Shown one piece after another: positions 12,493-52,862 of a DNA stretch of 64,000 nt. The stretch covers positions 14,198,001 through 14,262,000 of the forward strand of contig CATNEN010000038.1 of assembly GCA_950097015.1 (NCBI GenBank), given 5' to 3'. Each line of letters begins with the position of its first letter. Position 1 is the stretch's first letter. A program made the position numbers and the translations under genes. The notes beneath the pieces were generated by a model. It saw only the letters and a list, made by a program, of their open reading frames with translations. It ran no database searches and was not told the origin of the DNA. Origin of the DNA: Macrostomum hystrix (lineage: Eukaryota; Animalia; Platyhelminthes).

Positions 12493-13686
12493 ATGCTGAA
12501 ATCGAAGCAGAGGATTGTCTACGCTGTGACTTCAGCAGTGACCATCGGAATTATTCTGCTGTTGTTGACTTACGGTGGCCAGTCCAACTCGCGCCAGCCA
12601 GAGCATGCAGCGCCACCCAGTGGCGTGGAGATTTCGGAATCAGACAATCCATCATTACCGGGCATTGATGATCAAGCTCCTTCTGAGCTAGATATACTAC
12701 TGCTCACAGAGCAAAAAGGTTCGATTCCAGCATTCGCGCAGGAATGTCCGCGCTTCTCGGAGCTCAGAGGTATCAACTTTCAGCACCCTGACGTGGCAAT
12801 GCGACTATGCCGATACCAAGCTGCGTACACAATGCTAAGCCAAAAATATCCACCGTGCGAGATCGGCGAAAACTTACCGCCTCAGTTCATGAAGAGGGTC
12901 AATAAGACGTCTGCTAGAAGCTATATTCGGAGCGCACTGACTGGCAGGAATATCACAGTCTACACCTACCTTGCCAGTGACACCATATCTAAAAGCGTCA
13001 TGTCGTCACACAGCTGGCAGAATGATAGCGTTGCCTTCACTCTGTCGATTGCCAAGAAGTTTCCCATCGGTTCCGTCTCCTTCATGGACATCGGCTGCAA
13101 CGTCGGCGTCTACACGCTGCAGGCCAGGGAAGCCGAAATCCCAACGGTGGCAGTCGACGCGAACTTCCGGGACCTCATCCGGGTTCGGATGTCTGCTAGC
13201 GATATGGGCTGGCAAACAAACTACGACGACAAGCTGAAGCTGATGTGGATGTATTTCCAAGGATCCGTGGCGCTGCACTATCTTAAATTTGATACCGGAT
13301 TGTGCCACGTTGATAAAGACAGGGAACACAGAGAAATCTTGACTGACACAATCCCAGTGATGACTGGCAGGGCTGAAGAGCTTTTGAGCAGCCTCATTAC
13401 GGACCTGGTGGTCATGAAGATCGACATCAGTGCCGGCAAGCAGATCCTTGAAACTGGGCAGAGGCTATTTAATGAGAAAAAGATTATCGCTGTGAAGATC
13501 GAGCTGCATCATCTTGGCAATGCGCAGCCCGCTTCCATCAGCCAGTTCGCCGAGTTCCTTGTGAAGCTCAATTACTCGCTATTCCGAATCGGCAGCCTAG
13601 ACCGCGCGCTAGACCCGAAACTCGTGCGCGAGTGGGACGGAATCTGGATTCGTAATGACTTTCTGAGCAAATTACGCACGAAGTGA
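12493..13686 (+). CDS. FkbM/Methyltransf_21-like SAM-dependent methyltransferase with N-terminal type II membrane anchor (MT1), intronless, 397 aa
   Basis: ATG at 12493 follows a CAG acceptor-like site. MLKSKQR plus a hydrophobic TM, then a stem, motif I FMDIGCNVGVYTL, AVDAN, VVMKIDI and terminal WDGIWIRNDF. Paralogous to MT2-4. Confidence 0.85.
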   Translation: MLKSKQRIVYAVTSAVTIGIILLLLTYGGQSNSRQPEHAAPPSGVEISESDNPSLPGIDDQAPSELDILLLTEQKGSIPAFAQECPRFSELRGINFQHPDVAMRLCRYQAAYTMLSQKYPPCEIGENLPPQFMKRVNKTSARSYIRSALTGRNITVYTYLASDTISKSVMSSHSWQNDSVAFTLSIAKKFPIGSVSFMDIGCNVGVYTLQAREAEIPTVAVDANFRDLIRVRMSASDMGWQTNYDDKLKLMWMYFQGSVALHYLKFDTGLCHVDKDREHREILTDTIPVMTGRAEELLSSLITDLVVMKIDISAGKQILETGQRLFNEKKIIAVKIELHHLGNAQPASISQFAEFLVKLNYSLFRIGSLDRALDPKLVREWDGIWIRNDFLSKLRTK

Positions 13687-14192
13687 GCGACATTTTATCA
13701 AATGAATTTACATTTTCATCACTTGCCTGCCTAATGTACTCGTAAATGATCAATGTGGCCCTTTTATAATGCCCGTTTCATCACCATTTTTGCTCTAATT
13801 CAATAAAATATTTACTTTTTTTATTTGCTTCAGGAAATGAAGGTCCACTCATATTTGTACTGTATGTTAGAAGCAAAAAATACACAGCTTGGACATGCGA
13901 GAGTAATTTAGCGATTCGAAATTGAATAAATGGTGAGCTCATGTGCGTTGCTTGTTTATTTAAACTTTTTTGCGAAAGTTTAAGAAGCTATACCCCAACA
14001 GCTTACAGGGAAAACATCGTGCCTATCAGCAGAGCATTATAAAAGAGCATTGCGAAGCAAAGCAATAGCCAGCCATGTGGGGTTGAAATCATCATGTCAA
14101 AGTACATGCAGGGGACTTACATTTGCTCGCATTGTCAGCGGCAAGCTCAGAAACTGATGTTAAAAAAGAGGATAATTATATCCGATTCCAGT

Positions 14193-14280
14193 TAGGGGTG
14201 TGAGTGGCAGAGTGGTCTAAGCGTTTGCCTCTTTCACAAAGGTTCATGGGCTCGATTCCGCGGCGAGGCCACATTCATTG
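14193..14280 (+). mobile_element. 5' head of tRNA-derived SINE (family 2), interrupted by a LINE fragment
   Basis: Box A/B-like GTGGCAGAGTGGTCTAAGCG...GGGCTCGATTCC; matches the head of the copy at 29385. Confidence 0.65.
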
Positions 14281-14284
14281 GAGT

Positions 14285-16459: not shown

Positions 16460-17688
16460 ATGCAGTTGAAGACACTAAGAGCAGCTTGCTTAATGCTGGT
16501 TGTACTCATGACGATAGTTGGACTCATCGTACAGTTTAGCTTTCATTCAAAATCAATTCTAAAGATAAAGAATTCAACACAGCTGAGGCCTTGCTGCTTG
16601 ACTAGACGGACTTTAAATTTCGGAAACACCAACTCTTCTGCCTTGCTGAAAGAGTTCGGCAGCGTCTGCCACGACCGCAAGTGCCACGCAGCCTTTGAGT
16701 CCGCCATCGACAGAACCGAACGCGTTCCCAAGATTCGGCACATTCTGTGGAAAACTGAACGCGTGCCGACCTACTTCGCTAAGCAGCTGAATTCGTGGCT
16801 GAAAATTCATCACAACTGGACCTATGTCCTGTGGCGCGACCAAGATCTGGATGAATTTGTTGCCGTGCACTATCCAGGTGTGCTGCAGAGATTCCGGTCG
16901 CTCAAGCATCACATCATGCGAGTGGACATGATTCGCTACCTGATACTGCACCACGTGAGTCCCAGAAAATCAGTACTCAATCCACAACGAAGAATTGCCA
17001 GCTGAAAATAGCAGATACTCCGATCTTTCAGTTCGGAGGAGTGTACGCGGACCTGGACTATGTCCTGGTGCGCCCCCTGGACTGGTTTCTCAAGTACCCT
17101 GCCACCGTGCCAATCACAGCGGAGGCCATCGCGATGTTCTACTTCGGCCTGAAGTGGCCCCCGGATCGGCTTGCCAACCCGGCGTTCATGATTTCGGAGC
17201 CGCAGCACCCCTTCTTCTCCTACTGCATCCAGAAGCTGGCAGCCAATCCCACCGAAAACGCATCTCTGTTCGCTGGTCCACTGGGGCTCTCCACAATGGT
17301 CGAGCAGTATACGGCCGACTTTTCTGCCACAGCCGATCCGGGCGGAATTGTGCTCGTGCCGCCCTCGCGAGCGTTCGACGCCTTCGCAAACAACGGCTTC
17401 TGGGGCAGCGCGTCGAATCAGAGGAACTCCTGGACACTTGGCCTTGATCAAAAGTGCCAAGAAATCCAAGCGCTCAAGTCTTCACCAGCACAGCTACAAG
17501 AGTACTGCAAGGACATAAACAATTTGGACCCCATCACTGACAGAAAGGACATTTCGTATGCTGTTCGCGATGAGCAAACTCTTGGGACATGCTACAATAA
17601 TAGGGACTCCAAGCCAGCTACTTGTGACATCACAGTCGATATTAGAACCCTACTGCCCCACATATTGATGGGTGACGAAGTTTATTAG
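16460..17688 (+). CDS. DXD glycosyltransferase, GT32/OCH1-like (Gly_transf_sug), type II membrane protein (GT-A), ~383 aa
   Basis: Exons 16460-16954 and 17032-17688; 77-nt phase-0 intron GTGAGT...TTTCAG. N-terminal TM, VPKIRHILWK, WTYVLWRD, RVDMIRYLILHH|FGGVYADLD, HPFF, AGP. Confidence 0.9.
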
Positions 17689-20641: not shown

Positions 20642-20872
20642 GCTCGAAACAATTTTGTTTGGATAAATAATTTTTCCGATAAAATATTTTATTCACTTGT
20701 CCTCGAGTTAAACTTCAGCATCGTGAATAAAATTCTCGAGAATTTCACTCATTTAAACACTATACCCAAGCACCCAAAACGCAAATTTCAGATTGCATCA
20801 ACTCTAATTTATATCATGGCGATAAATCGATTCTCAATCATGCATCGAAAACTAACTGACGATGCGTTTCAG

Positions 20873-23800
20873 CCGAAAATTGCCGCGATAATTCATCAGA
20901 CATTTGCTGCTGATCAAGCATTGAACGCGCACAGAAGTTATATTAAAAGTTGCATCGAACTAAATCCCGATTGGCAGTACTACATGTGGACAGATGATGC
21001 CATCGAAGCCTTTATAAAGGACAATTATGCTTTTTTTCTGCCCAGGTATCTCGCTTACAAATCACAAGATCAAAGAAGACAGAGTGCTCGCTATATGATT
21101 TTGCATCACTTTGGAGGTGAGGTCTGCTATTAGGGGTGAAATTTTGGGTAACAGCTTTATGCAAGGAGATAAAAAATACAAGTAAGTACTGGGTTTGATG
21201 AGCAAATGCTTGGTACTGCATTTCCTCAAAGGCCTGGCAGCTTACTAAATACTAAATGACGGTTGTTCAGCCTCTTACAAAATCGCCAAAATCGACCAAA
21301 ATTTAAGCAAGCGCTATTTTTCACTTAAGGACTTGATTTATGCCGAGCTTTAGTGCTTTAGTTCACATTGTACCCAGATTTTCTCAAACTAATCACCCCC
21401 ATTTAACAAGATCCTGATGAAACGTTCTAAAACTATGAAAATAATTCCCTCCTAATGCATTTTCTAGGAATTTTCATCGACATGGACGTTCAGTGCATGC
21501 GACCGTTTTTTCCTAGCCTAGAAGAACTGACGGCCTTTGTAGCCCAGGAGAACACGATGATGCTTCCCTTCGAGAGAGCGGCAGCCATAAATAGTGTTAT
21601 GGGTTCTGTATCTGGGCATCCTTTCTTCCTGCGCCTCGTGTTTGAGATGATCGAGGTTGACGACAAAGAAGAAGGCACACTATCGACCTCTGGTCACTTC
21701 ATGCTTACCAAAGCGCTTAGAAACTGGTGGCTAAGTGAATTCACTAGCTGCTTTCAAGTGACCCTGCTCAGCCCAGAGTTGCTCAAACCAATCGTTCGCA
21801 ACAATGCGAATAACTTTAAAAGGCCTTGCAAAGAGCTGGGTAAAAGTAAGTTCTGTTTTTTTTCACAAATTTGTCGCGCTTGCAGTATAGCTTTAGTTTA
21901 GGAACCATAGATCACTATTTTATGAGCCATAGACTATGGCTTATCAAAATACTCGAGCAAAAAGTACGAATTTACCGTGACGGAAATTAAGAGAGGGTCT
22001 TCTTTTTGAGAAAATGCTTTAAGTGAATCCTAAAACAGTTGACACTTTTCGGCGGACATTCGAGGTGATAGGAAGACGAGAGCGTATGGGTAATAAGTTC
22101 TCGATCCAGAGCTCGAGAGCTGTTTGTCGGGGATATGGTCTATAGACACCTGCATCAAAGGGCAGAGCATCGGCAATAGGGTCAGAAGTGGATTCTCTTC
22201 GACCTAGTTGACCAGAAACTCCACAATTTGGTCAATAAGCTTTATCTGTTCCTCTTCCCACCATGCGAAATATAGCTTTTTGCAGCCTAGTTAATCCTGC
22301 AAGCATTCAATTTAATCATAAGTAGGCGCAGCAGTGTTGGTTTTGTCAGCCTAACTGAGAATAAAGCCACCCAAAATGAGAATTCTGCCTAAGCTGACTG
22401 CGAAGGGCCTGGCTGCGTGCAGCCTTAGTCTATGGGCCATAGACAATAAAGGACAAGCAAAGTGATAAAAAGGCATCCAATGTAAGAATCGATCGCTTTT
22501 TCTCTTTCCCCCAGCTCTCTCCACTCCTCCAAGCGCAACTTCTCCATCACTGCTTCTCCATCACCCACAGTCTCGTTGCTTTCTTGCCTATTTATCCAAC
22601 ACTTAGAATTAACAGAGTTCAGTCTTCACCACTGCAATAAAAATGCCCGCCTCATCTGTGGACCGCCAGCGACTCATCGCGGCCATTGAAAATGGAAGCT
22701 CACTAAGGGAGAATTTACACCCTTCCTCAACCCATCGGAACTGGCCAACAGTGCGCTGAAGGCACGGATCAAAAGCCGCCTGGCAGACGCTGGACTAGTC
22801 AACGAGGAGGCCGTTGCTCCAGATGGCGTCAACAAAGAGGAGTGGCGATTCATGCTGTTAGAGAGGGAGGCGCGCGAAGCGATTGATGACACAGTCACTG
22901 CTGGGAAGGCTGCCGCGTGGGACCTGTATTGCAGACGACTCTTTGGGCAGTGCATTGAGGGACGGCTTTTTATCACTTTGCTTGTCCTTTATTGTCTATG
23001 GCCCATAGACTAAGGCTGCACGCAGCCAGGCCCTTTGCAGTCAGCGTAGGCAGGATTCTCATTTTGGGTGGCTTAGGCCGACAAAACCAATACTGCAGCA
23101 GTTGCTCTGGCAGCCTGTCTATGGCTCGGACTGTGGCAAACCTGCATTCAATTTAATCCTGCAAGCGCCCATTTAATCATTTTTACTACACATCGTGCAT
23201 TTTTTATCAGTGCAATCTGGGACATGAGTAATGAGCATCTCCAGCGCTTCGTTTGAAGAAGAAGGCACTGAAGCAAGCTTCGAAGCAGGGAATGAAGAAG
23301 GGCCCCCTCCCCCCCCGAGGCACGTCGCGGAAAGTATGACAAAATAACTGATGAGAAGTATGACATGATCTTAAACGCTTTGGATCCGTGGAGAAAGTGC
23401 GGCTGCCATCGCGCAGTGGCTCCAGGTGAAGCTGCGCACCGTATACTCGATACGAAGACGTTACGAAGTCGCAGGTCACCGAAATCGAGGTGCTCGCGGG
23501 GGCGCTCGAACAGTGAAGATTACCGATGATCACGTGCAACAGTTGGTAAGCTGGGTGGAAGATAATCCGCTTCTCACACTGAAGCAAATGAAGCATAAGC
23601 TTCAGGCCGAAGATCCTCAGTTGCATGTCAGCGAGTGCACAGTAAGCAGAGCACTAGACAAGCAGCTCTTTACGCTAAAATGCCTCAGTCGTGACGCCGA
23701 TATTCCAGCAGCGAGAAACTCTGACGAGAACATTGCGCGCCGCCAGGTCTTCGCTCAGTGGCTGATCGAGCTAGAACCAGAATGTCATCTCATATACATT

Positions 23801-24784
23801 GATGAGACAGGCTTCAATATATGGACACGTCGGTCGCAGGGTCGCAGCATCAGAGGGCAGAGAGTTCGGCGCAAAGTACATACGCAACGTGGTGTGCAGG
23901 TGAATGTGATACAAGCTATGTCTCCTTCGGAATTCCTTATGAATTCGGAAACATCGGCCTGGTCAGCCACAAGATCCTGGCGGAGACAATGACGGCAAAT
24001 AAGTTCCAGGACTTCATTAATGAAATGGTGCAGAGCGTTATGTCACGCGAGGATGTGAATGAAGGTGACAACTTCTGCGTGATCATGGATGGCGCTCGCT
24101 TCCACAACGCAGCCACTGTTGTTACATTTTTGTGAATTTTCCATGCAGTTTAATATAGCCCTGTCTGCAAAGTTGCAACATTATTAAATGCGCGCTTGCA
24201 GGATTAAATTGAAATGCAGGTTTGCCACAGTCCGAGCCATAGACAGGCTGCCAGAGCAACTGCTGCAGCATTGCTGCGCCTACTTATGATTAAATTCAAT
24301 GCTTGCAGGATTAACTAGGCTGCAAAAAGCTATAGTTTCAAATATATGCAAAATATATGCACTATGGTTTCTCGAATTGAAAGCAGTTTTAGTAAAAACA
24401 TGCCATAGACAATAAGCAGTCAGTCTTCAGTCGAAGAATGCCATAGACAATAAACAATGTCAGTGGGAAGGACGTGGATTTCGTACTCTTTGCGAACGCC
24501 GCTGTTCTTACCCAGAACGCGAAAAGCTATAGCTTCGTAAATTCGTAAATGCTTCAATTTGTACGCTTCGTAAAATAAACTCTAAAACTTCAGGTGCGCC
24601 AGGCCAGACACCGCCTGACCAATCAGTCGATGAGACAGAGCTCTGCACAAATAATACGGATCACGGATTGGAGAAAAAACTCGTCAGATTTGAAACAACA
24701 AAGCGCCATATTGAAGAGCGCAAAAGACAACAAATCTACTTCAAAATTCACAAGGTTGCTCAGAACGTCAATCTCTTAGTCTAA
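20873..24784 (+). CDS. Divergent GT32/OCH1-like DXD glycosyltransferase (GT-D); partial model, 5' exons unresolved
   Basis: Exon 20873-21116 (PKIAAIIHQTF...WQYYMWTD...ARYMILHHFG) splices in phase 1 to exon 21468-21845 (GIFIDMDVQC...INSVMGSVSGHPFF). A candidate last exon at 24594-24784 is in phase but less certain. Confidence 0.7.
22273..24332 (+). mobile_element. IS630/Tc1-mariner-like DNA transposon with long TIRs and a defective transposase
   Basis: Left TIR pieces 22273-22332 and 23095-23180 are inverted matches to 24180-24332, with TA at both ends. Transposase ~23365-24135 has an HTH region, IYIDETGF and IMDGARFH, and is frameshifted and truncated. Confidence 0.85.
22332..23095. mobile_element. 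Non-autonomous foldback element (~140-bp TIRs) nested in the left TIR of the Tc1-like element
   Basis: CAGTGTTGGTTTTGTC...GCAAAGTGATAAAAAG (22332-22472) is an inverted match to 22965-23095. Confidence 0.8.
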
Positions 24785-25108
24785 GAAGAGATCAAATAAT
24801 CATTTTTATTTTTTTGAGTACTATCGCTAGTAAGGCATATAGTACGGTCTATAAACTAACGGACCGGTTCGGCTTGAATATCAAGTGTAAATAGCTTACT
24901 GAGTCAATTATGTCTATGGCACAATATAGCTGTAATACCCCTTGCTGTGGGGCCAAATCCGCTTGATTGAATTTCCCGCTTGCGCTCTTGAAGCATGGGT
25001 AATATACCATTAATGCCCATGCTTTGAGGGCGTTAATGGAAAATCAGGGGGCGCCGTTAGGCTCCCGAGGATTTTTCAATGACGCCCGCAAAGCTTGGGT
25101 ATCAATTT

Positions 25109-25362: not shown

Positions 25363-25370
25363 ATATACTA

Positions 25371-30211: not shown

Positions 30212-30261
30212 GTTTAGAGCCTCCCTCAAGTTTAGAGCCTCCCCCCTTTAGTTGCTAAAGC

Positions 30262-39908: not shown

Positions 39909-40012
39909 AGAATAAATTCAGCTCAGGACTTACGTAGGTCGAGGACACGTTGCTGGAGGCCTTATGAAACTAATGATTAAAATCGTTCTCAAACATCCTG
40001 CAGGACTGAGGC

Positions 40013-41235: not shown

Positions 41236-41603
41236 CGTGCGTGCATCAGTGCTACAACCCTTGCCACCTGCCAGCCGGTCTCTCCCTGGCAACCACCTTA
41301 CTATATTGACTGATGACAACAAATTAAAAATTATGATATCGCTTTTTCTCAATTTTCCTCTTGAAAGCGCAAAAATACCGAGCTTACGAGCTAAATTAAC
41401 TTCCAAGGAAGACGGTGTCTGTGACACTAGATCAATAAATGAAGCAGGTTTTGTGATTATATAGTCAACAACTTTTTTGTTTACTTTTAATTTAATTAAA
41501 TTATTTATTTATTTTTTTATTTTAACTACTCCAAACTAAAATTGAAACATTCAAATTGATTGCCTACTCTTGGGGTGAAGATTGTAAGTAGTACTAGCTA
41601 TAC

Positions 41604-42146
41604 CAGGGGTAGGCAAACTTATTTGCTGGCGGGCCAAAGAGAGAGCCTAAAAGACGACCGCGGGCCGCATTGACTGTATAAATATAAGATAGGAGAGATG
41701 AGACACGGGAGAGATGAGACACAGGAAATATGGGACATGAGAGAGATGAGACGCGGGAGAGATGAGACACAGGAGAGATTAGACACGGAAGAGATTAGAC
41801 ACGGGAGAGATTAGACACGGGAGAGATGAGACACGAGAGAGATGAGACACGGGAGAGATTAGACACGGGAGAGATGAGACACGAGAGAGATGAGACACGA
41901 GAGAGATGAGACACGGGAGAGATAAGATAGGGAGAGATTAGACACGGGAGAGATTAGACACGGGAGAGATGAGACACGAGAGAGATGAGACACGGGAGAG
42001 ATAAGATAGGGAGAGATTAGACGCGGGAGAGATTAGACACGGGAGACATGAAACAGGACACTGTAGATGTCAGAAGGGGCAACGGGCCGGATTTGGGAGC
42101 TTCGAGGGCCGCATCTGGCCCGCGGGCCGGAGTTTGCCGACCCCTG
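41604..42146 (-). mobile_element. hAT-type MITE with 16-bp satellite
   Basis: Same termini reversed; 8-bp TSD AGCTATAC. Confidence 0.92.
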
Positions 42147-42171
42147 AGCTATACAATTTTATGGTTCTTGA

Positions 42172-42326
42172 AGGGGTTGTACAGAGCGCCGGACTCACCA
42201 CTTAAAGGTCGGGGGTTCGATTCCCGACTCCACTGAAACAATTTGTGTCCTTTAGCAAGACATTTAACTATACATTGCTTCAGTTCACCCAGCTGTAAAA
42301 TGTGAACAGCATGAGCTGGGGTAATT
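42172..42326 (+). mobile_element. Truncated SINE family 1 copy
   Basis: GGTCGGGGGTTCGATTCCCGACTCCACTG...CAGTTCACCCAGCTGT. Confidence 0.78.
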
Positions 42327-42414
42327 GGTTCGGCACCAGCTCAACCAGATACAAAAATATCTATGGCACAAGCCCATCATACTGATACAACCACAGATTC
42401 TATATTACTACACG

Positions 42415-43390
42415 AACGAAAAGCTCGACTTAGAAAAGATGCCCTTCCAAATCCCTACACTTTTCCACCACGCTTGGAGAAGGAATCGGTTGAAGTCGAT
42501 TAGCGACCAGACCACATTGCTGACAACATGTATCCACCAGTTCTGCATCGTGAAGACACGTACGCTGTCGAGATGCCTGAGCTACACGCAATGCCAGCCG
42601 ACGCTCAGGATAAAACTGGCTCAGAAGACAGGGCAACAAACAACCGCAACGAAGTTCGAAAGGAGCGGAAGAAACAGCGGGATAGAGCTCGATATCGAGA
42701 TGGAGTCATCAAGAGATTAAAGCACAAGCTTCAAATAGCTTCAACTGCCACTTCTGAACAGCAACGGCACAAACTGTGAGGACGATGGTGATGCCATGGC
42801 AATTGAGATTCGTGACTTACGTGAGAAGGTCACGGCTGCATCAACTTCAGCTGCAGAGCAGCCCCAGCAGAATCGGGCAGTTTCTGCAGATGGAGACGTT
42901 GCAACAGAAATTGCATTCGACAATGTGGAGGCTACTGATGTAATCCCTTACATCGGAGGATGGATTTTTCGGAAGCTGCAAATTTTTGCATGCGACAGCT
43001 GTAAGGATCAGTTGGTAACGGACGAGTCACCTGCTCGAATCTTCACCTGCACAAAAACTTTGAAGACTCTCGATACGGCCTTACTCAGCCGTCGAGCGCG
43101 TTTGTTGCGATATTCTGTAAGATGGAGGAGATTTTTCGTCGAGAAATGTCAACAGCAGCAGCTGCTGATGCCATTGGGGCAAGAATCCTCGGCAGATTTG
43201 AGCGATTTAGTGTGCAGCTTCCATTTTGTATCGAACATCGAGCCGAAAGCAATGCACAAGCGGCAGGCCTTTTGTGCACATGCGATTGCATCAGTGGTGC
43301 CGAGAGAAGATGGAGACTGTGCGGAAGGAAAGAGATCGCGCTATTGCTAACCGCAAGCTCAAGAAGTTGGGACATAATGCATGGTTAGGG
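42415..43390 (+). mobile_element. Remnant of a THAP-domain/P-element-like transposase
   Basis: KARLRKDALP resembles a THAP C-terminus. YIGGWIFRKL...CDSCKDQL and HMRLHQWCRE resemble the THAP9/P transposase C-terminal region. Stops and frameshifts are present and the catalytic core is absent. Confidence 0.55.
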
Positions 43391-43450
43391 TACTCACTGT
43401 GCTTCATTATTTTACTTATTTGACACGCTTTCTTGAATACTGTGTTTGCT

Positions 43451-45172
43451 TGTCATGCTTATATGTCATGCTTATCTGTCATGCTTATCTGTCATGCTTA
43501 TATGTCATGCTTATCTGTCATGCTTATCTGTCATGCTTATCTATCATGCTTATCTGTCATGCTTATATGTCATGCTTATCTGTCATGCTTATCTGTCATG
43601 CTTATCTGTCATGCTTATCTGTCATGCTTATCTGTCATGCTTATCTGTCATGCTTATCTGTCATGCTTATCTGTCATGCTTATCTGTCATGCTTATCTGT
43701 CATGCTTATCTGTCATGCTTATATGTCATGCTTATCTGTCATGCTTATCTGTCATGCTTATCTGTCATGCTTATCTGTCATGCTTATCTGTCATGCTTAT
43801 ATGTCATGCTTATCTGTCATGCTTATCTGTCATGCTTATCTATCATGCTTATCTGTCATGCTTATCTGTCATGCTTATCTGTCATGCTTATCTGTCATGC
43901 TTATATGTCATGCTTATCTGTCATGCTTATCTGTCATGCTTATCTGTCATGCTTATCTGTCATGCTTATATGTCATGCTTATCTGTCATGCTTATCTGTC
44001 ATGCTTATCTGTCATGCTTATCTGTCATGCTTATCTATCATGCTTATCTGTCATGCTTATATGTCATGCTTATCTGTCATGCTTATATGTCATGCTTATC
44101 TGTCATGCTTATCTATCATGCTTATCTGTCATGCTTATCTGTCATGCTTATCTGTCATGCTTATCTGTCATGCTTATATGTCATGCTTATCTGTCATGCT
44201 TATATGTCATGCTTATCTGTCATGCTTATCTGTCATGCTTATCTATCATGCTTATCTGTCATGCTTATCTGTCATGCTTATCTGTCATGCTTATCTGTCA
44301 TGCTTATCTGTCATGCTTATCTATCATGCTTATCTGTCATGCTTATCTGTCATGCTTATCTGTCATGCTTATCTGTCATGCTTATATGTCATGCTTATCT
44401 GTCATGCTTATCTGTCATGCTTATATGTCATGCTTATATGTCATGCTTATCTGTCATGCTTATCTGTCATGCTTATATGTCATGCTTATCTGTCATGCTT
44501 ATATGTCATGCTTATCTGTCATGCTTATCTGTCATGCTTATCTATCATGCTTATCTGTCATGCTTAACTGTCATGCTTATCTGTCATGCTTATCTGTCAT
44601 GCTTATATGTCATGCTTATCTGTCATGCTTATCTGTCATGCTTATCTGTCATGCTTATCTGTCATGCTTATCTGTCATGCTTATCTGTCATGCTTATCTG
44701 TCATGCTTATCTGTCATGCTTATCTGTCATGCTTATCTGTCATGCTTATCTGTCATGCTTATCTGTCATGCTTATATGTCATGCTTATCTGTCATGCTTA
44801 TCTGTCATGCTTATCTGTCATGCTTATCTGTCATGCTTATCTGTCATGCTTATCTGTCATGCTTTTATGTCATGCTTATCTGTCATGCTTATCTATCATG
44901 CTTATCTGTCATGCTTATATGTCATGCTTATCTGTCATGCTTATCTGTCATGCTTATCTGTCATGCTTATCTATCATGCTTATCTATCATGCTTATCTGT
45001 CATGCTTTTATGTCATGCTTATCTGTCATGCTTATCTATCATGCTTATCTGTCATGCTTATATGTCATGCTTATCTGTCATGCTTATCTGTCATGCTTAT
45101 CTGTCATGCTTATCTATCATGCTTATCTGTCATGCTTATCTGTCATGCTTATCTGTCATGCTTGCCTGTCAT
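43451..45172. repeat. 13-bp satellite (TGTCATGCTTATC)n, ~1.7 kb
   Basis: Exact 13-nt period; the ~600-aa ORFs are repeat artefacts. Confidence 0.96.
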
Positions 45173-47989
45173 TCTTGCTTGTTTAATCACCATGTTATCT
45201 TTATTTGTTTTAATGTTCCGCGCATTCAATAAATATTCGGCTCAGAAATTTGTTACTCGCGTTTTCTCCAATTAAAAGTCATTTCTCAATATTGGCTCGC
45301 CTAGCGTTAAAGGCAAATAACAAAGTTTACTAAAAATATATATTAATGCGGCAGTATTTAACTCGCGTCTGTGGCAAAAACACTGGGTTTTCGATTTCTC
45401 TTGGAGTGACCCATCTACTCGTAGGTAATATAGAATCTGTGGATACAACTGCATTCAAATTCGGCAAACTGCAAGCAAATTCAGCAGCAGAAGTATGCCA
45501 TTAATCCTCATCGGCTGGACTGGACAATAATTTTCTGTTCCGCGTACATTGTGCTGTGCCAAAGTACTGAATAAACCATTTTCTAATGGCAGGCACAGTA
45601 ACAGTGCAAAGTACTTTAATACATCAATAAGAACCGCAGACAAGATTAAAACCGAACGATTCAACACGTTTTTGTGAGCAATTCAAACAAGCTCGAACAA
45701 TGCGAAAATGGTGATTTGCTTAGTAGGCAGCGAGGCACAAATGAAAAGCAGTGATTTTACATGTACCACGCATTGCAGTTTGTTGGTGTAACGGTCATAA
45801 CGGTGTTATCAGCGAATAGGCGCAGTTTGTCAAACCTAAATTGCACGAGAGTTCTTCTGGCGCGGGCCTCTGCGGTCGGGTTGATAAAACTATCCGCATA
45901 GTCAGCGATCTCCTGCTTGATTGCCGCCTTCCAGCCGGAGATCGCGCTCTCATTCCTTCTCTCTGCTTCTGCTGCCGAATTTGCTTGTAGTTTGATCGAT
46001 ATGATGGGCTTGTGCCAAAGATATTTTTGTACCTGGTTGAGCTGGTGCCGAATTTTCTTGCAGTCAAAAGTATAGCCATAGAGGTTGTTCGAATTTGAAT
46101 ACAGTTGTATTGAAATTGACTGCAGAAATGAAGAATTTGAGTGTATTAAAGCAACACAGTCCAAGAAAATTGGACGTATCGGTTGCGCACCGTGGATGAC
46201 AATAAGACGGAGTTGCCGAAAGCCGTAAACGAGGCCATGGTTGCAGTGCTTTGTGGTGTATCCCGCGACTGACTGGCGCCAACCCATTGCCTACTATCCA
46301 GCTTTTCGAACCCTTGACGGATTCAGGCAAGCTATCGATGAGTGTCTGACAGCCAGTCACAACCACAATGAAGCGTTCACTTGCACTAATTGTTGATCAG
46401 GAGTCGACACAGTGGTCTTAGGCGGGTGTCTCTAGGCGGGTGGTTAGTGACAGGGGCATTAGAAGTCAACAAAAATAAATGTTCCTCTTTGCGCAGAGTT
46501 GAAGTTTAGATTTCGAGAACTGTGAATAATAACTCTTAAAAGCGATAGCAGCTAAGTAATCGGGTACCATGTGCAGCCGCGACGACCAGGGACTGCAGGA
46601 CTGCCGCAAAATGCCCGGAGTTCCTGGAAATAGTTGGGGGCCGGGGGCTCTAGACTGGCATCCTGTTCGGGAAGCACTTGTCCCCACTCATCCTGACTCT
46701 GCAATGACTCCGCAGCTATAGAAAAACAAGCATTATCATCGTCACTGATCTCTCTGTCACTGTCAAAACTACACCGAAGCTAAGTTGGTATCGGATCGCT
46801 ATCCAGTCCAAGACGCCGGCATGCTTCAACAGCAGCCGCTATTCTTTGGGGTTAGCTTGACAAGAGTAAGACAAAATAGTGAACGGCGAGAGGCATGAAA
46901 CTAATGACTTGGTCTGTTTTCTCACTGCCACTCTATCCTCCGCTATCTATTACGTTGAGTCGCCATTAGTGAATCCGTTGTACTGGTCAACTGATCCAAT
47001 GCACTACTGCCGTTGATTTTACCTGCCGAGAAAGCTTGTCAAGAAATCATTTTCAAGAAGAACTATCATTCCCATCCTGTGACGCAATGATTGCAGACAT
47101 TGTTATGAGAATGACTGCCTCTAGAAGATTCGACTTTTCCTTTGCACGAATGTGTACGCTCCGTAGCGAGAGGTCAGATGAGACCTTAGTTCGGTACAAA
47201 GTTACATAGCAAACTTTTATGTACTTCCCCCTTCTCTCCCTCTATTTGTTAAACTTCTAAAGCTAACCTTCACTTCTCTTTCCTTTCCCTCGTCTCTGAT
47301 TGGCTAGCTATTCGTCTCTCTTCCTCACCCTCTGCCTCTCAGCTCTTACCCTCTAGCCCGTCTGGCTCGTTTTAACTGTGCCGCAACCACCTGAACCCTG
47401 GATACCACGTGGTGCTCGTATGCGTTGTAGAAGTTCTTGCTGGAAAAAGTGACAGCACGTTGATTACAGGCACGGTGTGGAAAGATCAACAAATACAACA
47501 AACACATGGATGCAGGTGTTGACCGGACTCGATGCGGTGATTGGCATGTTTAAGTTGTTCTAGACGCTGCTTTTCCACTTCGCCCTACCTGAGCAGCTGC
47601 ACCTAAGTAGAATCGCTTCAACTGAATCACTGCCGCGCCCATCGAATGCTTTGGCGAAACGGCGTCACTAAAAAGACAATCAAAAAAAGTTATGAAAGGC
47701 TTGTAAAAACCGATTTAATCGATTTTTTAGCTAGTATTTCAAGTAAGTACATGTAGATCCAAGTTAAAGGGACACGAATCGAATTCTAGCCGAATGAGAA
47801 AATTCGCTACCTTGTCAGTTGGAGAGGTCTCTCTAAATTTAATAAAAAGCGCGTATGCTACTGAATTAAGCTCTTTGTACTCGTAATTTATAAGTTTAAT
47901 AATACGCTAAAGTTCCAAAAATAAAGCTGAAATTTGAATTCGAACAAAAAGGCAGTGTTCTGGAGATTTGTTTTAGATTGGTTACACTG

Positions 47990-48930
47990 CAGGGGTAGGC
48001 AAACTTATTTGCTGGCGGGCCAAAGAGAGAGCCTAAAAGACGACAGCGGGCCGCATTGACTGTATAAATATGAGATAGGAGAGATGAGACACGGGAGAGA
48101 TGAGACACGGGAGAGATGAGACACGGGAGAGATGAGACACGGGAGAGATGAGACACGGAAGAGATTAGACACGGAAGAGATTAGACACGGGAGAGATTAG
48201 ACACGGAAGAGATTAGACACGGGAGAGATGAGACACGGGAGAGATGAGACACGAGAGAGATGAGACACGGGAGAGATAAGATAGGGAGAGATTAGACACG
48301 GGAGAGATGAGACACGAGAGAGATGAGACACGGGAGAGATAAGATAGGGAGAGATTAGACACGGGAGAGATGAGACACGGGAGAGATGAGACACGGGAGA
48401 GATGAGACACGGGAGAGATTAGACACGGGAGAGATGAGACACGGGAGAGATGAGACACGGGAGAGATTAGACACGGGAGAGATGAGACACGAGAGAGATG
48501 AGACACGGGAGAGATTAGACACGGGAGAGATTAGACACGGGAGAGATTAGACACTGGAGAGATGAGACACGGGAGAGATGAGACACGAGAGAGATGAGAC
48601 ACGGGAGAGATTAGACACGGGAGAGATGAGACACGAGAGAGATGAGACACGGGAGAGATTAGACACGGGAGAGATTAGACAGGGGAGAGATGAGACACGA
48701 GAGAGATGAGACACGGGAGAGATAAGATAGGGAGAGATTAGACACGGGAGAGATTAGACACGGGAGAGATTAGACACAGGAGAGATGAGATAGGGAGAGA
48801 TTAGACGCGGGAGAGATTAGACACGGGAGACATGAAACAGGAGACTTTAGATGTCAGAAGGGGCAACGGGCCGGATTTGGGAGCTTCGAGGGCCGCATCT
48901 GGCCCGCGGGCCGGAGTTTGCCGACCCCTG
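47990..48930 (-). mobile_element. hAT-type MITE with expanded 16-bp satellite
   Basis: Same termini; imperfect TSD (GGTTACAC.. / GGTTACAG). Confidence 0.9.
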
Positions 48931-49215: not shown

Positions 49216-50444
49216 CTAATGAACTTCGTCACCCATCAATATGTGGGGCAGTAGGGTTCTAATATCGACTGTGAATGCACAAGTAGCTGGCTTGGAGTCC
49301 CTATTATTGTAGCATGTCCCAAGAGTTTGCTCATCGCGAACAGCGTACGAAATGTCCCTTCTGTCAGTGATGGGGTCCAAATTGTTTATGTCCTTGCAGT
49401 ACTCTTGTAGCTGTGCTGGTGAAGACTTGAGCGCTTGGATTTCTTGGCACTTTAGATCAAGGCCAAGTGTCCAGGAGTTCCTCTGATTCGACGCGCTGCC
49501 CCAGAAGCTGTTGTTTGCGAAGGCGTCGAACGCTCGCGAGGGCGGCACGAGCACAATTCCACCCGGATCGGCTGTGGCAGAAAAGTCGGCCGTATACTGC
49601 TCGACCATTGTGGAGAGCCCCAGTGGACCAGCGAACAGAGATGCGTTTTCGGTGGGATTGGCTGCCAGCTTCTGGATGCAGTAGGAGAAGAAGGGGTGCT
49701 GCGGCTCCGAAATCATGAACGCCGGGTTGGCAAGCCGATCCGGGGGCCACTTCAGGCCGAAGTAGAACATCGCGATGGCCTCCGCTGTGATTGGCACGGT
49801 GGCAGGGTACTTGAGAAACCAGTCCAGGGGGCGCACCAGGACATAGTCCAGGTCCGCGTACACTCCTCCGAACTGAAAGATCGGAGTATCTGCTATTTTC
49901 AGCTGGCAATTCTTCGTTGTGGATTGAGTACTGATTTTCTGGGACTCACGTGGTGCAGTATCAGGTAGCGAATCATGTCCACTCGCATGATGTGATGCTT
50001 GAGCGACCGGAATCTCTGCAGCACACCTGGATAGTGCACGGCAACAAATTCATCCAGATCTTGGTCGCGCCACAGGACATAGGTCCAGTTGTGATGAATT
50101 TTCAGCCACGAATTCAGCTGCTTGGCGAAGTAGGTCGGCACACGTTCAGTTTTCCACAGAATGTGCCGAATCTTGGGAACGCGTTCGGTTCTGTCGATGG
50201 CGGACTCAAAGGCTGCGTGGCACTTGCGGTCGTGGCAGACGCTGCCGAACTCTTTCAGCAAGGCAGAAGAGTTGGTGTTTCCGAAATTTAAAGTCCGTCT
50301 AGTCAAGCAGCAAGGCCTCAGCTGTGTTGAATTCTTACATTTGGGAACCGACCTCGAGTAATTTCTCAACTGTATAATGACACCAAAGATCGTCATGAGT
50401 ACCAACAGTACAAAGCAAGATGCTGTAAGTGTCTTCAACTGCAT
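49216..50444 (-). CDS. GT32/OCH1-like DXD glycosyltransferase (GT-C), inverted near-identical paralog of GT-A, ~383 aa
   Basis: Exons 50444-49950 and 49872-49216; identical 77-nt intron. Confidence 0.9.
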
Positions 50445-52254
50445 GTTTGCACAAGCAGAGAGCGAAAAATCAGGGTGAAAAATTTCTTGCTCACACCTTT
50501 TATACCTATTTATGTAATATATATTGTTTTTGCGCAGACAATGGCTAAATGAGAAGGGTGTTCGTCTGAAGCGTCTCTAGGTAAAAACTGTACAACAGCT
50601 TTCTATAGCAATAAATGAGATCCAATGAGAAAGCTGGTCTTGCGGTAAATAGGAGCAGCTGAGCAAAAAGGCGCAGCAGCATTGTCTTTGGAGGAGGAGT
50701 TGAATAGGTGAAGAATTTCTAACTCAATTTAGAATTGCATGAGTCTAACTAAAGTTGAAGTCGTTCTTGCGCATCTATTTAAAACGCACCCAACGACGAG
50801 TCTGGAAAATAGCCCCCACAAGCAAGCCTGCTGGTGTGGGCCTCAGTTCTCACATATAGAGAAGCGCGTAGTTATGTATTGGTTTGTCTCTCGAAGCGTC
50901 TACTTATTTATAAATATGACAAGTTTCTATGCATAAAAATACCGTCTTGTAAAAAACATAGTACAGTTTTCACCACATAGTTTTCATATAGTTTTCATCT
51001 TGGTATAGTATAGTTTGCTAGAAACATAACTAGAAACTATACTAGAAACATAGTATAGTTTTCACCACGTAGGGTGGGTGATCTACCAAGCGACAAGTAT
51101 TACTCTAAACACAAATCCACCGGATACAACCCCCAGGTTAGATAAGTCCTGTACAGTTAGCTATTGGATCCCCCAACAGGAGGGACACATAACCGAGAAC
51201 CGACCGCAGTTAACCGACAGCGCAACGTCGGCCGCCCGTGGCCAGCCTCGTTTGTGGACGAGCTGCGTTCCGCCGCAACCAACCGGTTGTACTCTTTCGT
51301 ATTTATAACTCCATACAGATCTTTTTAACTCATGCCTTTCGAAAACAGTTTTGTCCGAAATGAGTAAATCAAAGCTCAACGAGTTAGACTTCACCTTCCG
51401 TAATAAAAAAGATTGATTTGGTGAATTACTGAAAAAAACAAAAATGTATAGAGATCGAGCTAAATTTATTGTGTTTAACGTTTTTAGCGCGTGACTGCTT
51501 TTAGGGATTGAACAAGTTCTTTGACATCCTATAGGCGGTGCATCTTCATCTAGACATCTGTTGATCGCCTGTTAAATGACATTCACAGAATTCCCTCTAA
51601 TTTAGGTATTGTTTGCTAGCGAAATGCAGCATTGAAGTTCTGGTGGCCCGGTTTAGACGACCCATCGTTCCCCTAGCTCAACCCTGACCTCATCAACATG
51701 GAGACTCAAAATTAGACAATGATCTAGGCCATCGCATCGAACAACAACAGCAACAACCATACTTTCCCAATTACTTATTAGAGTTCTGTCAAGCCATAAA
51801 TCACGTCATAATATCCGCCCGCGGCTACTGCACCTGTCACGATTTGCTGGGCTTCTCGTTGCGTCTCCGCTGCAGCCAATCAGCCTGAGCAGCTAGAAGG
51901 CTGGCTGTCATCATCTTTGAGCAGGATGAGTACTCCCAGTTGGAGCCGGCCTGCAGTGATTTTCCGTTCGCGCCATGGTTGGCATCGATTCTCTTCTTTC
52001 GCCAAACACTCGTTGATATCAGTTCTGGGGTGCAGTCGTGGTATGAAAACTCGGCAGTTTTTCTATTACTAGACTTTTTCTGGCTCATTTTTTAGCACAC
52101 AATGCATTGCCGAAAAAAGCTATATGCAAATAAAAGCCATTGAACTAAATAGGGGGCAAGTAATCGACGCACTCAGCAAAAAAATACCATAGACGAAAGC
52201 GATCAAGTTGGGCAAAACGTGCTTTTTTGCTTCTCAAGCCGCTTCTCTACAACA

Positions 52255-52862
52255 CAGCGAATTAGCGGCCATCAACATGCGACCCGAAAGTGGACATCTT
52301 GTCAAAGATCGTGCTATCAACACCAGCTGGCAGCTGGAACAGGTGTTTATCCAACGCCAAGAAGTTCCCTGCAAAGTCCGTCACCTTCATGGACATCGGC
52401 TGCAACATCGGCGTCTACACGCTCCAGGCCAGAGAGGCTGGCATCCCAACGGTGGCAGTGGATGCGAACATCAGGAACCTGATCCGAATTCGCATGTGCG
52501 CCAACGACATGGGCTGGGAATCCGATGGCAATCTCAAGCTGATGTGGATGTACTTCCACGATTCCGTGTCGCTGCAGTACCTCAACTTCGGTACCAGCAT
52601 GTGCAACGTTGGTGGCGGTGGATCCACCAAGGACGTCATAACCGACACGATCCCCGTGATGACTGGCAGGGCTGACGACCTCCTGAGCAGCGTCACCACG
52701 GATCTGGTGGTCATGAAGTTCGACATCGAGACCAGCGAGTACGCCTTCTCGACGTGACAGGCATTGTTCAATAAGAAGAAAGTCATTGCCGTGCAGATGT
52801 TTGTTGACTCGGACAGCATCTGGAACGACTTTGTTGGAGTCGTGCTCAACGGGCCTCCGTAG
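52255..52862 (+). pseudogene. Decayed FkbM-like methyltransferase MT4
   Basis: Core KKFPAKSVTFMDIGCNIG...VVMKFDIETSEY is near-identical to MT3. No TM or start, several small deletions, and a premature TGA at 52755-52757. Confidence 0.85.

What the first reader, a model, noticed from the sequence alone, without database searches (positions are those of the whole stretch)
12493..52862. Candidate animal gene cluster for O-methylated glycan synthesis: interleaved Golgi-type FkbM methyltransferases and GT32 glycosyltransferases
Seen: across ~40 kb the only recognisable non-transposon genes are two unrelated families in the order MT1, GT-A, GT-D, MT2, MT3, GT-B, GT-C, MT4. Every complete member has a short basic tail, one TM helix, a stem and a catalytic domain (type II topology). 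Known: GT32/Gly_transf_sug enzymes add alpha-linked sugars in the Golgi (OCH1, SUR1/MIPC synthase, A4GALT). FkbM-family enzymes are SAM-dependent O-methyltransferases often found in bacterial polysaccharide loci. O-methylated hexoses occur on glycans of planarians, molluscs and nematodes, and to my knowledge the animal methyltransferases responsible are largely unassigned. Inference: a co-duplicated 'add a sugar, then methyl-cap it' module, i.e. a biosynthetic-type cluster of non-homologous enzymes in an animal, possibly for mucus, adhesive or surface glycans.
Basis: partly seen in the sequence, partly recalled or inferred. Interest (0 to 1): 0.88.

Follow-up and report, generated by a model that had tools for sequence, protein, structure and literature searches.

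The report
Interleaved flatworm methyltransferase and glycosyltransferase genes
A 40-kb stretch of a Macrostomum flatworm chromosome really does hold interleaved genes for two kinds of secretory-pathway enzymes (FkbM-type methyltransferases and GT32 glycosyltransferases). The arrangement looks like the product of local duplication and gene conversion in two large gene families, and it is not shown to be a working "add a sugar, then methylate it" unit.

Summary
Window 12.4-52.9 kb carries, in the stated order, four FkbM-like methyltransferase (MT) genes and four GT32 glycosyltransferase (GT) genes. Apart from these, I recognised only transposon remnants and minisatellites.

Caveats on the gene set:
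- Only MT3 is intact with all family motifs.
- MT1 is intact and transcribed but lacks both acidic residues of the DIExxE motif.
- MT2 is frameshifted.
- MT4 is a fragment with stops.
- GT-D is a distant GT32 with no anchor found.

MT1, GT-B and GT-C are transcribed, and the 77-nt GT intron is spliced.

Both families are large here: about 35 MT genes at 20 loci, and at least 110 GT32 hits. Only this region and a sister cluster 350 kb upstream place them within 50 kb of each other. Six other MT loci have no GT of any family nearby. Counted as one event, the adjacency has a chance probability of about 0.15-0.25.

An MT->GT head-to-tail unit recurs three times. The GT cores, intron included, are homogenised by gene conversion.

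The reading as lumen-facing, probably Golgi, glycan enzymes is reasonable. Functional coupling is untested and not favoured (about 0.2).

The scan noted FkbM arrays and gene-converted GT32 arrays elsewhere in this genome. The interleaving is specific to this region.

The parts
12493..13686 (+). MT1: intronless FkbM-like type II methyltransferase paralogue, 397 aa. Intact and transcribed, but with S and K in place of the two Glu of the family's K-I-D-I-E-x-x-E motif.
   Evidence: ORF. Full-length alignment to the family. Anchor at residues 8-26 with a KSKQR tail. Exact transcript contigs spanning 12400-13930 in three runs. dN/dS of 0.2-0.3 against MT3 and the sister MT. No Pfam hit of its own.
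16460..17688 (+). GT-A: two-exon GT32 glycosyltransferase. Exons 16460-16954 and 17032-17688, with a 77-nt GT..AG phase-0 intron. DXD motif = YADLDY.
   Evidence: PF04488, 27.3 bits against cut-off 23. Splice sites read directly. Spliced contigs 16954->17032. A full-length M. lignano homologue reads straight across LILHH|FGGVYADLDY. GT-A-specific transcription is not shown.
20855..21846 (+). GT-D: distant GT32 paralogue. Conserved exons 20855-21116 and 21468-21846; DXD motif = DMD. The N-terminus and 3' end are unresolved and no membrane anchor was found.
   Evidence: PF04488, 32.7 bits. Splice sites read directly. 57% identity to a GT-D-like gene in the sister cluster. The upstream ORF part is repeated at 18104-18166 and 42182-42241.
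23375..26028 (.). Tc1/mariner-type transposase remnants (23375-23989 + and 25468-26028 -).
   Evidence: HTH_32, HTH_23 and DDE_3 matches.
32089..33199 (+). MT2: FkbM-like gene broken by a 1-base insertion in the VAVDAN codons near 32662. Near-identical to the sister-cluster MT.
   Evidence: Two overlapping ORFs. DNA alignment shows GATGAGAAAC against GATGCG-AAC. 95.6% nucleotide identity over 1350 bp to the sister MT. dS of 0.03-0.04.
35351..36544 (+). MT3: intact intronless FkbM-like type II methyltransferase, 397 aa, with all family motifs (DIGCNIG, VAVDAN, KIDIETSE).
   Evidence: PF05050, 23.7 bits against 22.7; TIGR01444 E=9e-7. AF2 model at pLDDT 85.6 shows an anchor helix, a disordered stem (35-75) and a Rossmann methyltransferase domain. 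Class I methyltransferase folds at Z 10-12, including FkbM 2py6 at rmsd 2.9 A.
40013..41235 (+). GT-B: two-exon GT32 (40013-40501 and 40579-41235). Transcribed.
   Evidence: PF04488, 30.6 bits. A transcript contig's loose end matches exactly at window 40165. 95.5% nucleotide identity over 1081 bp to the sister GT.
49216..50444 (-). GT-C: two-exon GT32 (50444-49950 and 49872-49216). Inverted near-copy of GT-A. Transcribed.
   Evidence: 96.5% nucleotide identity over 1246 bp to GT-A. Transcript contigs carry GT-C-specific bases and run into its 3' flank at 49201.
52245..52901 (+). MT4: partial FkbM-like pseudogene, covering roughly residues 139-356 of MT3, with in-frame TGA and TAG stops.
   Evidence: 94% nucleotide identity to MT3 over about 500 bp.
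16634..17350 (+). Homogenised GT core, intron included, shared with 40186-40959 and 49492-50265 and with the sister GT. It is 88-100% identical, while the 5' 170 bp (32-55%) and the 3' 250 bp (57-61%) are old and divergent. This is a gene-conversion tract.
   Evidence: blastn. Sliding-window identity.
27468..48839 (.). One 16-nt minisatellite family (unit GGAGAGATGAGACACG or its complement) at 27468-28147, 30014-30182, 38083-39051, 41692-42055 and 48078-48839, lying between the genes. A 13-nt satellite lies at 43451-45176.
   Evidence: Tandem Repeats Finder. Cross-matches.

Best explanation
This is a genuine, repeat-rich neighbourhood on one chromosome of a Macrostomum flatworm. Two large, lineage-expanded families of lumen-facing, membrane-anchored enzymes lie intermixed in it.

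Shown:
- The family assignments and the N-terminal signal anchors.
- Conserved SAM-binding and FkbM motifs in MT3 and the sister MT.
- The DXD motifs in the GTs.
- Transcription of MT1, GT-B and GT-C, and splicing of the GT intron.
- An MT->GT head-to-tail unit present three times.
- A homogenised GT catalytic core.
- Decay of two MT copies.

Inferred: an MT gene and a GT32 gene became neighbours once, long ago. The pair was then copied locally, once anciently (MT1/GT-A against MT3/GT-B) and once recently (MT2..GT-B against the sister pair 350 kb away). Single genes were added or inverted (GT-C, MT4). Gene conversion keeps the GT cores alike. Surplus copies decay.

Inferred function: both are Golgi glycan-modifying enzymes. 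The GTs add an alpha-linked sugar. The MTs are plausible glycan O-methyltransferases.

The linkage is best read as a by-product of duplication. It is not evidence that these MTs methylate the products of these GTs.
For: Families:
- PF04488 above cut-off in all 4 GTs. PF05050 in MT3, MT2 and 13/17 paralogues. TIGR01444 in 16/17.
- Invariant DIGxNxG and DAN motifs, nearly invariant K-D-I..E, and 4 invariant Cys.
- Rossmann methyltransferase model at pLDDT 85.6 and its fold matches.
- Anchors.

Expression.

Family size and dispersion:
- 43 MT matches in 20 loci, and at least 110 GT32 hits in about 70 loci.
- Only this window and the sister cluster have a GT32 within 50 kb of an MT. The next nearest is 58 kb away and the rest are more than 175 kb away.
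- No GT family among ORFs around six other MT loci.
- The MT subclade that holds MT1 and MT3 also holds copies at C38:3.0 Mb, C38:4.24 Mb and C39:4.84 Mb, all without GT neighbours.

Duplication and conversion:
- MT2 against sister MT: 95.6% nucleotide identity, dS 0.03.
- GT-B against sister GT: 95.5%.
- GT-A against GT-C: 96.5%, inverted.
- Mosaic identity profile that includes the intron.

Decay: MT2 frameshift; MT4 stops.
Against: - If this window and the sister cluster are counted as two independent co-localisations, chance is unlikely (P about 0.01-0.03).
- The MT-GT adjacency has survived an old duplication (MT1 against MT3 dS about 2) in a region with heavy repeat turnover. That could reflect selection for linkage.
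- Both clusters also share a third gene type (GT-D-like).
- ORF-based screening of other MT loci would miss GT genes made of short exons.
Confidence: 0.6

Rival explanations
1. One reading: a functional two-step module. The GT32 enzyme adds an alpha-linked sugar in the Golgi and the neighbouring FkbM enzyme O-methylates it. Linkage is kept by selection (co-regulation or co-inheritance), and the unit is amplified to diversify surface, mucus or adhesive glycans.
For: - Three head-to-tail MT->GT units, one pair of them old.
- Both gene types are transcribed in the same samples.
- Both face the lumen.
- Flatworm glycans are heavily and selectively O-methylated by unknown enzymes (PMC5936828).
- Precedents for GT + methyltransferase clustering in C. 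elegans 'glycoclusters' (PMC7614267) and on Ostreococcus chromosome 19 (PMC5082852).
- P of 0.01-0.03 if the two clusters count as independent events.
Against: - 18 of 20 MT loci, and nearly all GT32 loci, lie apart. There is no GT of any family near six other MT loci.
- The two clusters are related by duplication, so there is effectively one event (P about 0.15-0.25).
- In the window only MT3 is intact and motif-complete. MT2 and MT4 are decaying, and MT1 has lost both Glu of the DIExxE motif.
- There are no data on cell type, localisation or substrate.
Confidence: 0.2
2. The methyltransferase-like proteins do not methylate glycans. They act on another lumenal or secreted substrate (protein, lipid, small molecule), or some, such as MT1, are non-catalytic. 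The neighbourhood with GT32 genes is then coincidental.
For: - The FkbM family includes non-sugar O-methyltransferases (FK506 biosynthesis; TIGR01444 family description, from my own knowledge).
- Fold matches are generic class I methyltransferases of many substrate classes.
- MT1 lacks both acidic motif residues.
- The family is dispersed among unrelated neighbours: CUB, GPCR, P450 and kinase genes.
Against: - MT3, the sister MT and most paralogues keep every SAM and FkbM motif.
- One paralogue also matches the V. cholerae RfbT sugar O-methyltransferase family.
- The nearest protein clusters come from rotifers, diatoms and molluscs, and the best non-flatworm sequence hits looked up are from a mollusc. 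Molluscs carry methylated glycans (Stepan et al. 2010, listed among the references of PMC5936828).
- A lumenal SAM supply for glycan methylation is known in nematodes (PMC5936828, citing Wohlschlager et al.).
Confidence: 0.15
3. The near-identical copies are assembly artefacts (uncollapsed haplotypes or mis-joins), so the interleaving is overstated.
For: Several copies are 95-97% identical. The MT2 frameshift lies next to a short A run.
Against: - Identity is confined to gene bodies, with unrelated flanks and mosaic profiles.
- Paralogue-specific transcripts exist for GT-B and GT-C.
- The assembly has 42 contigs, and this one is 35 Mb long.
Confidence: 0.03

Closest known systems
FkbM-family SAM-dependent O-methyltransferases (Pfam PF05050 Methyltransf_21, TIGR01444; solved example 2py6). 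From my own knowledge, the family includes sugar O-methyltransferases such as V. cholerae RfbT and rhizobial NoeI.
   Same: Motif I D-x-G-x-N-x-G, the D-A-N strand end and the K-x-D-x-E-x-x-E motif. Rossmann fold. Profile matches in most paralogues.
   Different: These are eukaryotic and intronless. They have an N-terminal membrane anchor, a disordered stem and an extra Cys-rich N-terminal subdomain (residues about 76-190) that the bacterial profiles do not cover. Scores sit at or below the curated cut-offs. The substrate is unknown.
GT32 glycosyltransferases (Pfam PF04488 Gly_transf_sug; from my own knowledge: Och1, Sur1/Csh1, A4GALT/A4GNT).
   Same: Sugar-binding region with a DXD motif, scoring above the Pfam cut-off. 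Type II anchor. The second exon resembles Gb3_synth/GT32 clusters by language-model features, which is only a lead.
   Different: No PF04572 match. Only Macrostomum homologues were found by the word-based search. Donor, acceptor and linkage are unknown. The fold was not confirmed (model pLDDT 48).
C. elegans 'glycoclusters' (PMC7614267) and the Ostreococcus tauri chromosome-19 clusters of glycosyltransferases and methyltransferases (PMC5082852).
   Same: Eukaryotic genomic neighbourhoods that mix putative GTs with putative methyltransferases, including an FkbM gene in Ostreococcus. They hold several members of one family per cluster, in repeat- or transposon-rich and duplication-prone DNA. In both cases consecutive function is unproven.
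   Different: A different phylum and a different pair of families (GT32 + FkbM only). There is no sugar transporter or nucleotide-sugar enzyme here. No expression response is known.
Gene-converted tandem GT32 arrays elsewhere in this genome (earlier scan notes s1-327266 and s1-366067).
   Same: A homogenised catalytic core, intron included, with divergent ends.
   Different: Here conversion also links copies 23-33 kb apart, one of them inverted, and a copy 350 kb away. MT genes are interspersed among the GTs.

Membership tests
FkbM methyltransferase family (PF05050 / TIGR01444) | Profile match at the curated threshold | tested here: inconclusive
   PF05050: MT3 scores 23.7 bits against cut-off 22.7. 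The MT2 C-terminal half scores 27.2. MT1 has no hit. 13/17 paralogues match at E<=0.01. TIGR01444: 16/17 match at E<=0.01, but MT3 scores 29.5 bits, below the 37.7 cut-off.
FkbM methyltransferase family (PF05050 / TIGR01444) | SAM-binding motif I (D-x-G-x-N-x-G) and the K-x-D-x-E-G-x-E-type motif | tested here: met
   G195, N197 and G199 are invariant and D193 is nearly invariant. D216, A217 and N218 are invariant. K301, D303, I304 and E308 are nearly invariant across 17 paralogues. The motifs are also kept in a mollusc homologue. Exception: MT1 has S and K in place of the two Glu.
FkbM methyltransferase family (PF05050 / TIGR01444) | Class I Rossmann methyltransferase fold | tested here: met
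   AF2 model at pLDDT 85.6. Foldseek and VIA-align give class I methyltransferases at Z 10-12, including FkbM 2py6 at Z 10.2 and rmsd 2.9 A over 163 residues. The ranking does not single out FkbM.
FkbM methyltransferase family (PF05050 / TIGR01444) | SAM-dependent O-methyl transfer, here proposed onto a sugar hydroxyl | not testable with these tools
   Needs an enzyme assay or glycomics.
GT32 glycosyltransferases (PF04488) | Gly_transf_sug profile match above the gathering score | tested here: met
   27.3, 32.7 and 30.6 bits for GT-A, GT-D and GT-B, against cut-off 23. All four window GT exons match at E<=0.001.
GT32 glycosyltransferases (PF04488) | DXD motif at the start of the second conserved block | tested here: met
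   FGGVYADLDY in GT-A, GT-B and GT-C. GGIFIDMDV in GT-D.
GT32 glycosyltransferases (PF04488) | GT-A fold | tested here: inconclusive
   The model of the full-length M. lignano homologue P0169, built with window exons as alignment rows, reached only pLDDT 48. There were no PDB sequence hits.
GT32 glycosyltransferases (PF04488) | Retaining alpha-glycosyl transfer | not testable with these tools
   Needs biochemistry.
Type II Golgi glycan-modifying enzyme | Short cytosolic tail, a single N-terminal signal anchor, a stem, and a lumenal catalytic domain | tested here: met
   The 19-residue hydrophobic windows have mean Kyte-Doolittle hydropathy of 1.7-2.7 within residues 4-30. Basic tails are clear in MT1, MT3 and GT-B. 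Conserved Cys and N-glycosylation sequons follow the anchor. The model has a disordered stem. Not met for GT-D. Golgi residence itself was not tested.
Biosynthetic-type gene cluster (non-homologous enzymes of one pathway kept together) | Co-localisation of the two families beyond chance, genome-wide | tested here: inconclusive
   2 of 20 MT loci lie within 20 kb of a GT32 hit, against 0.29 expected (P=0.03). The two are related by duplication, and the probability of at least one such locus by chance is about 0.15-0.25 (the at-least-one figure is my arithmetic from that call's genome fractions).
Biosynthetic-type gene cluster (non-homologous enzymes of one pathway kept together) | General association of MT paralogues with glycosyltransferase genes | tested here: not met
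   There is no GT Pfam family among 71 ORFs of 140 aa or more in 185 kb around six other MT loci.
Biosynthetic-type gene cluster (non-homologous enzymes of one pathway kept together) | Co-expression | tested here: inconclusive
   MT1, GT-B and GT-C transcripts are present in the same three runs. These are contigs only, so they give no levels and no cell types.
Biosynthetic-type gene cluster (non-homologous enzymes of one pathway kept together) | Linkage conserved in related species | not tested
No eukaryote genome collection was reachable.
Biosynthetic-type gene cluster (non-homologous enzymes of one pathway kept together) | Consecutive steps on one product | not testable with these tools
   Needs glycomics and enzymology.

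The most novel reading that the evidence does not exclude
An ancestral two-gene cassette, made of an FkbM O-methyltransferase followed by a GT32 transferase, has been kept and copied as a unit in Macrostomum because the two enzymes act in sequence: an alpha-linked sugar is added and then methyl-capped. If so, this would be an animal biosynthetic gene pair. It would also name both an enzyme and an acceptor for the still unassigned animal glycan O-methyltransferases.
Probability: 0.2. Interest if true: 0.75.

Novelty: new member of a known kind. Interest (0 to 1): 0.4.

Why it matters
The enzymes that O-methylate glycans in flatworms, molluscs and nematodes have not been identified (PMC5936828, PMC7614267). 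Lumen-facing FkbM-like proteins are sensible candidates. A conserved partner glycosyltransferase would narrow the search for their acceptor.

This locus gives a concrete set of genes to test: MT3 and the sister MT as motif-complete copies, MT1 as a motif-divergent copy, and GT-B and GT-C as expressed neighbours.

As it stands, the locus mainly illustrates how duplication and gene conversion in expanded glyco-enzyme families can produce a cluster that looks biosynthetic.

Tried and rejected
- Word-based homologue search with MT3 found nothing. The exhaustive profile search was needed.
- PDB sequence searches gave nothing useful, neither with the MT profile nor with the GT exons.
- The structure of the GT was unusable. 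The model used the full-length M. lignano homologue P0169, with window exons as separate alignment rows, and reached pLDDT 48. No fold search was run on it.
The neighbour screen therefore covers 6 of 18 other loci.
- I considered a simple four-gene block duplication (M G G M twice) and a palindrome around MT2|MT3. Both are rejected. MT3 and MT4 resemble MT2 and not MT1. GT-D resembles neither GT-B nor GT-C. Only GT-A/GT-C fits an inverted copy, and that similarity ends at the gene borders.
- Literature searches found no paper assigning an animal glycan O-methyltransferase to the FkbM family, and nothing on these genes in Macrostomum.
- No complex prediction was sent, because no binding claim is made.
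- Spliced GT models were never joined. Exons were searched and compared one by one by reference, and whole-gene DNA was aligned with the intron left in.

Full report
WHAT IS THERE

The window is G000:C38:14198001-14262000 of a 220-Mb, 42-contig eukaryote genome. The best outside hits of its proteins are Macrostomum lignano proteins. I did not verify the species.

Between 12.4 and 52.9 kb the ORF list and Pfam scans recover eight genes in exactly the stated order:
- MT1: 12493-13686(+).
- GT-A: 16460-16954 and 17032-17688(+).
- GT-D: about 20855-21116 and 21468-21846(+).
- MT2: 32089-33199(+).
- MT3: 35351-36544(+).
- GT-B: 40013-40501 and 40579-41235(+).
- GT-C: 50444-49950 and 49872-49216(-).
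- MT4: about 52245-52901(+).

Other ORFs of 110 aa or more inside the interval give only Tc1/mariner-type HTH/DDE_3 matches or nothing. The rest is minisatellite. Outside the interval lie an RRM exon, a Bax-inhibitor gene and a kinase-like exon.

THE METHYLTRANSFERASES

An alignment of MT1, MT3 and 15 paralogues from the same genome shows these conserved features:
- Invariant G-x-N-x-G (D193 nearly invariant) and D-A-N motifs.
- A nearly invariant K-x-D-I-x-x-x-E motif.
- Four invariant cysteines.

13 of the 17 match PF05050 and 16 of the 17 match TIGR01444 at E<=0.01. Scores are at or below the curated cut-offs.

The AlphaFold model of MT3 (pLDDT 85.6) has an N-terminal helix, a disordered stem (residues 35-75) and a well-defined Rossmann methyltransferase domain. 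Fold searches return class I methyltransferases at Z 10-12, among them FkbM 2py6 and the sugar O-methyltransferases SpnH and CalS11. No single family stands out.

An exhaustive profile search finds 5407 relatives at E<=0.001. The best are M. lignano 'FkbM domain-containing' proteins, followed by molluscan proteins at about 1e-35. A Mya arenaria homologue keeps the motifs at 28% identity. Language-model neighbours are eukaryotic FkbM clusters from rotifers, diatoms and molluscs.

State of the four window copies:
- MT3 is intact and motif-complete.
- MT1 is intact, under purifying selection (dN/dS 0.2-0.3) and transcribed. It has S and K where the family has the two Glu of DIExxE.
- MT2 has a 1-base insertion in the VAVDAN codons.
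- MT4 is a 0.6-kb fragment with TGA and TAG stops.

THE GLYCOSYLTRANSFERASES

All four first exons match PF04488 above the cut-off.

GT-A, GT-B and GT-C are two-exon genes with a 77-nt phase-0 GT..AG intron between ...LILHH and FGGVYADLDY.... The join is confirmed in two ways. Contigs in three runs skip 16955-17031. A full-length M. lignano protein reads straight through the join.

GT-D is a distant paralogue, about 25% identical to the others. It has a DMD motif and further introns. No anchor was found for it, and the upstream part of its ORF is a repeat present at two other places in the window.

I searched and compared the exons separately. The joined proteins were not built.

TOPOLOGY

MT1, MT2, MT3, GT-A, GT-B and GT-C each have one hydrophobic segment within residues 4-30. 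Tails are basic in MT1, MT3 and GT-B. Cysteines and N-glycosylation sequons follow the anchor. The catalytic domains should therefore face the secretory lumen. Golgi residence is an inference.

EXPRESSION

Three small runs of one organism behave like transcriptomes. Their contigs cover MT1 end to end with no differences, leave the intergenic DNA uncovered, and lack the GT intron.

The 3' GT contigs carry the GT-C-specific bases and continue into GT-C's flank at 49201. A contig whose 5' part does not fit GT-A matches GT-B exactly at 40165.

So MT1, GT-B and GT-C are transcribed. Contigs give no expression levels and no cell types.

IS THE CO-LOCALISATION MORE THAN CHANCE?

Both families are large. 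The MT profile gives 43 matches, about 35 genes in 20 loci. GT32 gives at least 110 hits in about 70 loci. Both are concentrated on this contig.

- Only two MT loci have a GT32 within 50 kb: this window and a sister cluster at C38:13.815-13.865 Mb. The next nearest is 58 kb away, and all others are more than 175 kb away.
- Treated as independent events, this gives P of 0.01-0.03.
- The two clusters are related by duplication. The chance that at least one of 20 loci falls within 10-20 kb of a GT32 hit is about 0.15-0.25.
- In 185 kb around six other MT loci, including the four-gene array at C38:3.0 Mb, no glycosyltransferase family of any kind appears among 71 ORFs. The neighbours there are CUB, GPCR, P450, kinase, MFS and GDA1/CD39 genes.
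- In the MT tree, MT1, MT3 and the sister MT share a well-supported subclade (100/99) with copies at C38:3.0, C38:4.24 and C39:4.84 Mb, which have no GT neighbours.
- The closest GT paralogues outside the region (C3, C11, C39) have no MT neighbours.

HISTORY OF THE REGION

The sister cluster holds two tandem GTs, a third GT, one MT and a GT-D-like gene.

- MT2 is 95.6% identical in DNA to the sister MT (dS 0.03). GT-B is 95.5% identical to the third sister GT. The similarity ends at the gene borders.
- GT-A and GT-C are inverted copies at 96.5% identity.
- Sliding-window identity among GT-A, GT-B, GT-C and the sister GT is 88-100% over a roughly 720-bp core that includes the intron. It is only 32-55% in the first 170 bp and 57-61% in the last 250 bp between the A/C and B/sister lineages. 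This is a gene-conversion mosaic over old paralogues, as earlier notes of this scan described for other GT32 arrays.
- An MT lies upstream of a GT on the same strand three times: MT1->GT-A (2.8 kb), MT3->GT-B (3.5 kb) and sister MT->sister GT (15 kb).
- MT1 against MT3 has saturated dS of about 2, so the unit was already duplicated long ago.
- dN/dS values of 0.2-0.7 indicate constrained but fast-evolving genes.

READING

The enzymes are most likely lumenal glycan-modifying enzymes. FkbM-like proteins are reasonable candidates for the unidentified flatworm glycan O-methyltransferases (PMC5936828).

The claim of a biosynthetic module rests on one old adjacency that duplication has multiplied. 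Genome-wide, the two families are not associated, and surplus MT copies in the cluster are decaying.

Comparable mixed GT/methyltransferase neighbourhoods have been described, without functional proof, in C. elegans (PMC7614267) and Ostreococcus (PMC5082852).

I put about 0.6 on the historical-linkage reading, about 0.2 on a true functional module, and about 0.15 on non-glycan or non-catalytic MT function.

LIMITS

- The GT structure model failed (pLDDT 48).

Noticed in passing
window 16634-17350, 40186-40959, 49492-50265; sister cluster G000:C38:13836425-13837193: The GT catalytic core, with its 77-nt intron, is 88-100% identical in four genes whose 5' and 3' ends are only 32-61% alike. One of the four copies is inverted and one lies 350 kb away. 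This is a gene-conversion mosaic.
   Followed up: yes
window 13360-13400 (MT1 residues about 305-308 in MT3 numbering): MT1 has S and K where 15-16 of 17 paralogues have the two Glu of the K-I-D-I-E-x-x-E motif. It is nevertheless transcribed and under purifying selection. It may be a non-catalytic or re-purposed family member.
   Followed up: partly
window 27468-28147, 30014-30182, 38083-39051, 41692-42055, 48078-48839: One 16-nt minisatellite family recurs in both orientations between the genes. It could provide homology for the rearrangements in this region.
   Followed up: no
window 14190-14368: A short element is covered at about 250-320x summed contig depth in three transcriptome-like runs, with many loose ends at 14247-14258. 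It is probably an abundant transcribed repeat.
   Followed up: no
window 20555-20620, 18104-18166(-), 42182-42241(-): A short repeat is found at three places. At GT-D it translates to ...WSRESNPRPSSRESDAL... and looks tRNA-SINE-like. There it occupies the place where an N-terminal anchor would be expected.
   Followed up: partly
window 3234-4924 and 43451-45176: Long satellites with about 30-nt and 13-nt periods, 95-98% regular. They create long spurious ORFs in several frames.
   Followed up: no
window 1534-1998(-), 5858-6601(-), 54779-55294(-): Flanking genes: an RRM-domain exon, an intact Bax-inhibitor-1 family gene (E=4e-36) and a protein-kinase-like exon.
   Followed up: partly
L021-L040 (flanks of six other MT loci): One ORF near another MT locus matches GDA1/CD39 nucleoside phosphatase (E=8e-6). 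That family includes Golgi nucleoside diphosphatases. I did not resolve which locus it belongs to.
   Followed up: no
G000:C38:13815001-13865000 (L016-L020): The sister cluster also holds an LTR-retrotransposon pol (RVT/RNase H/integrase), Crypton- or DIRS-like integrase pieces, and a Peptidase_M24 gene.
   Followed up: no
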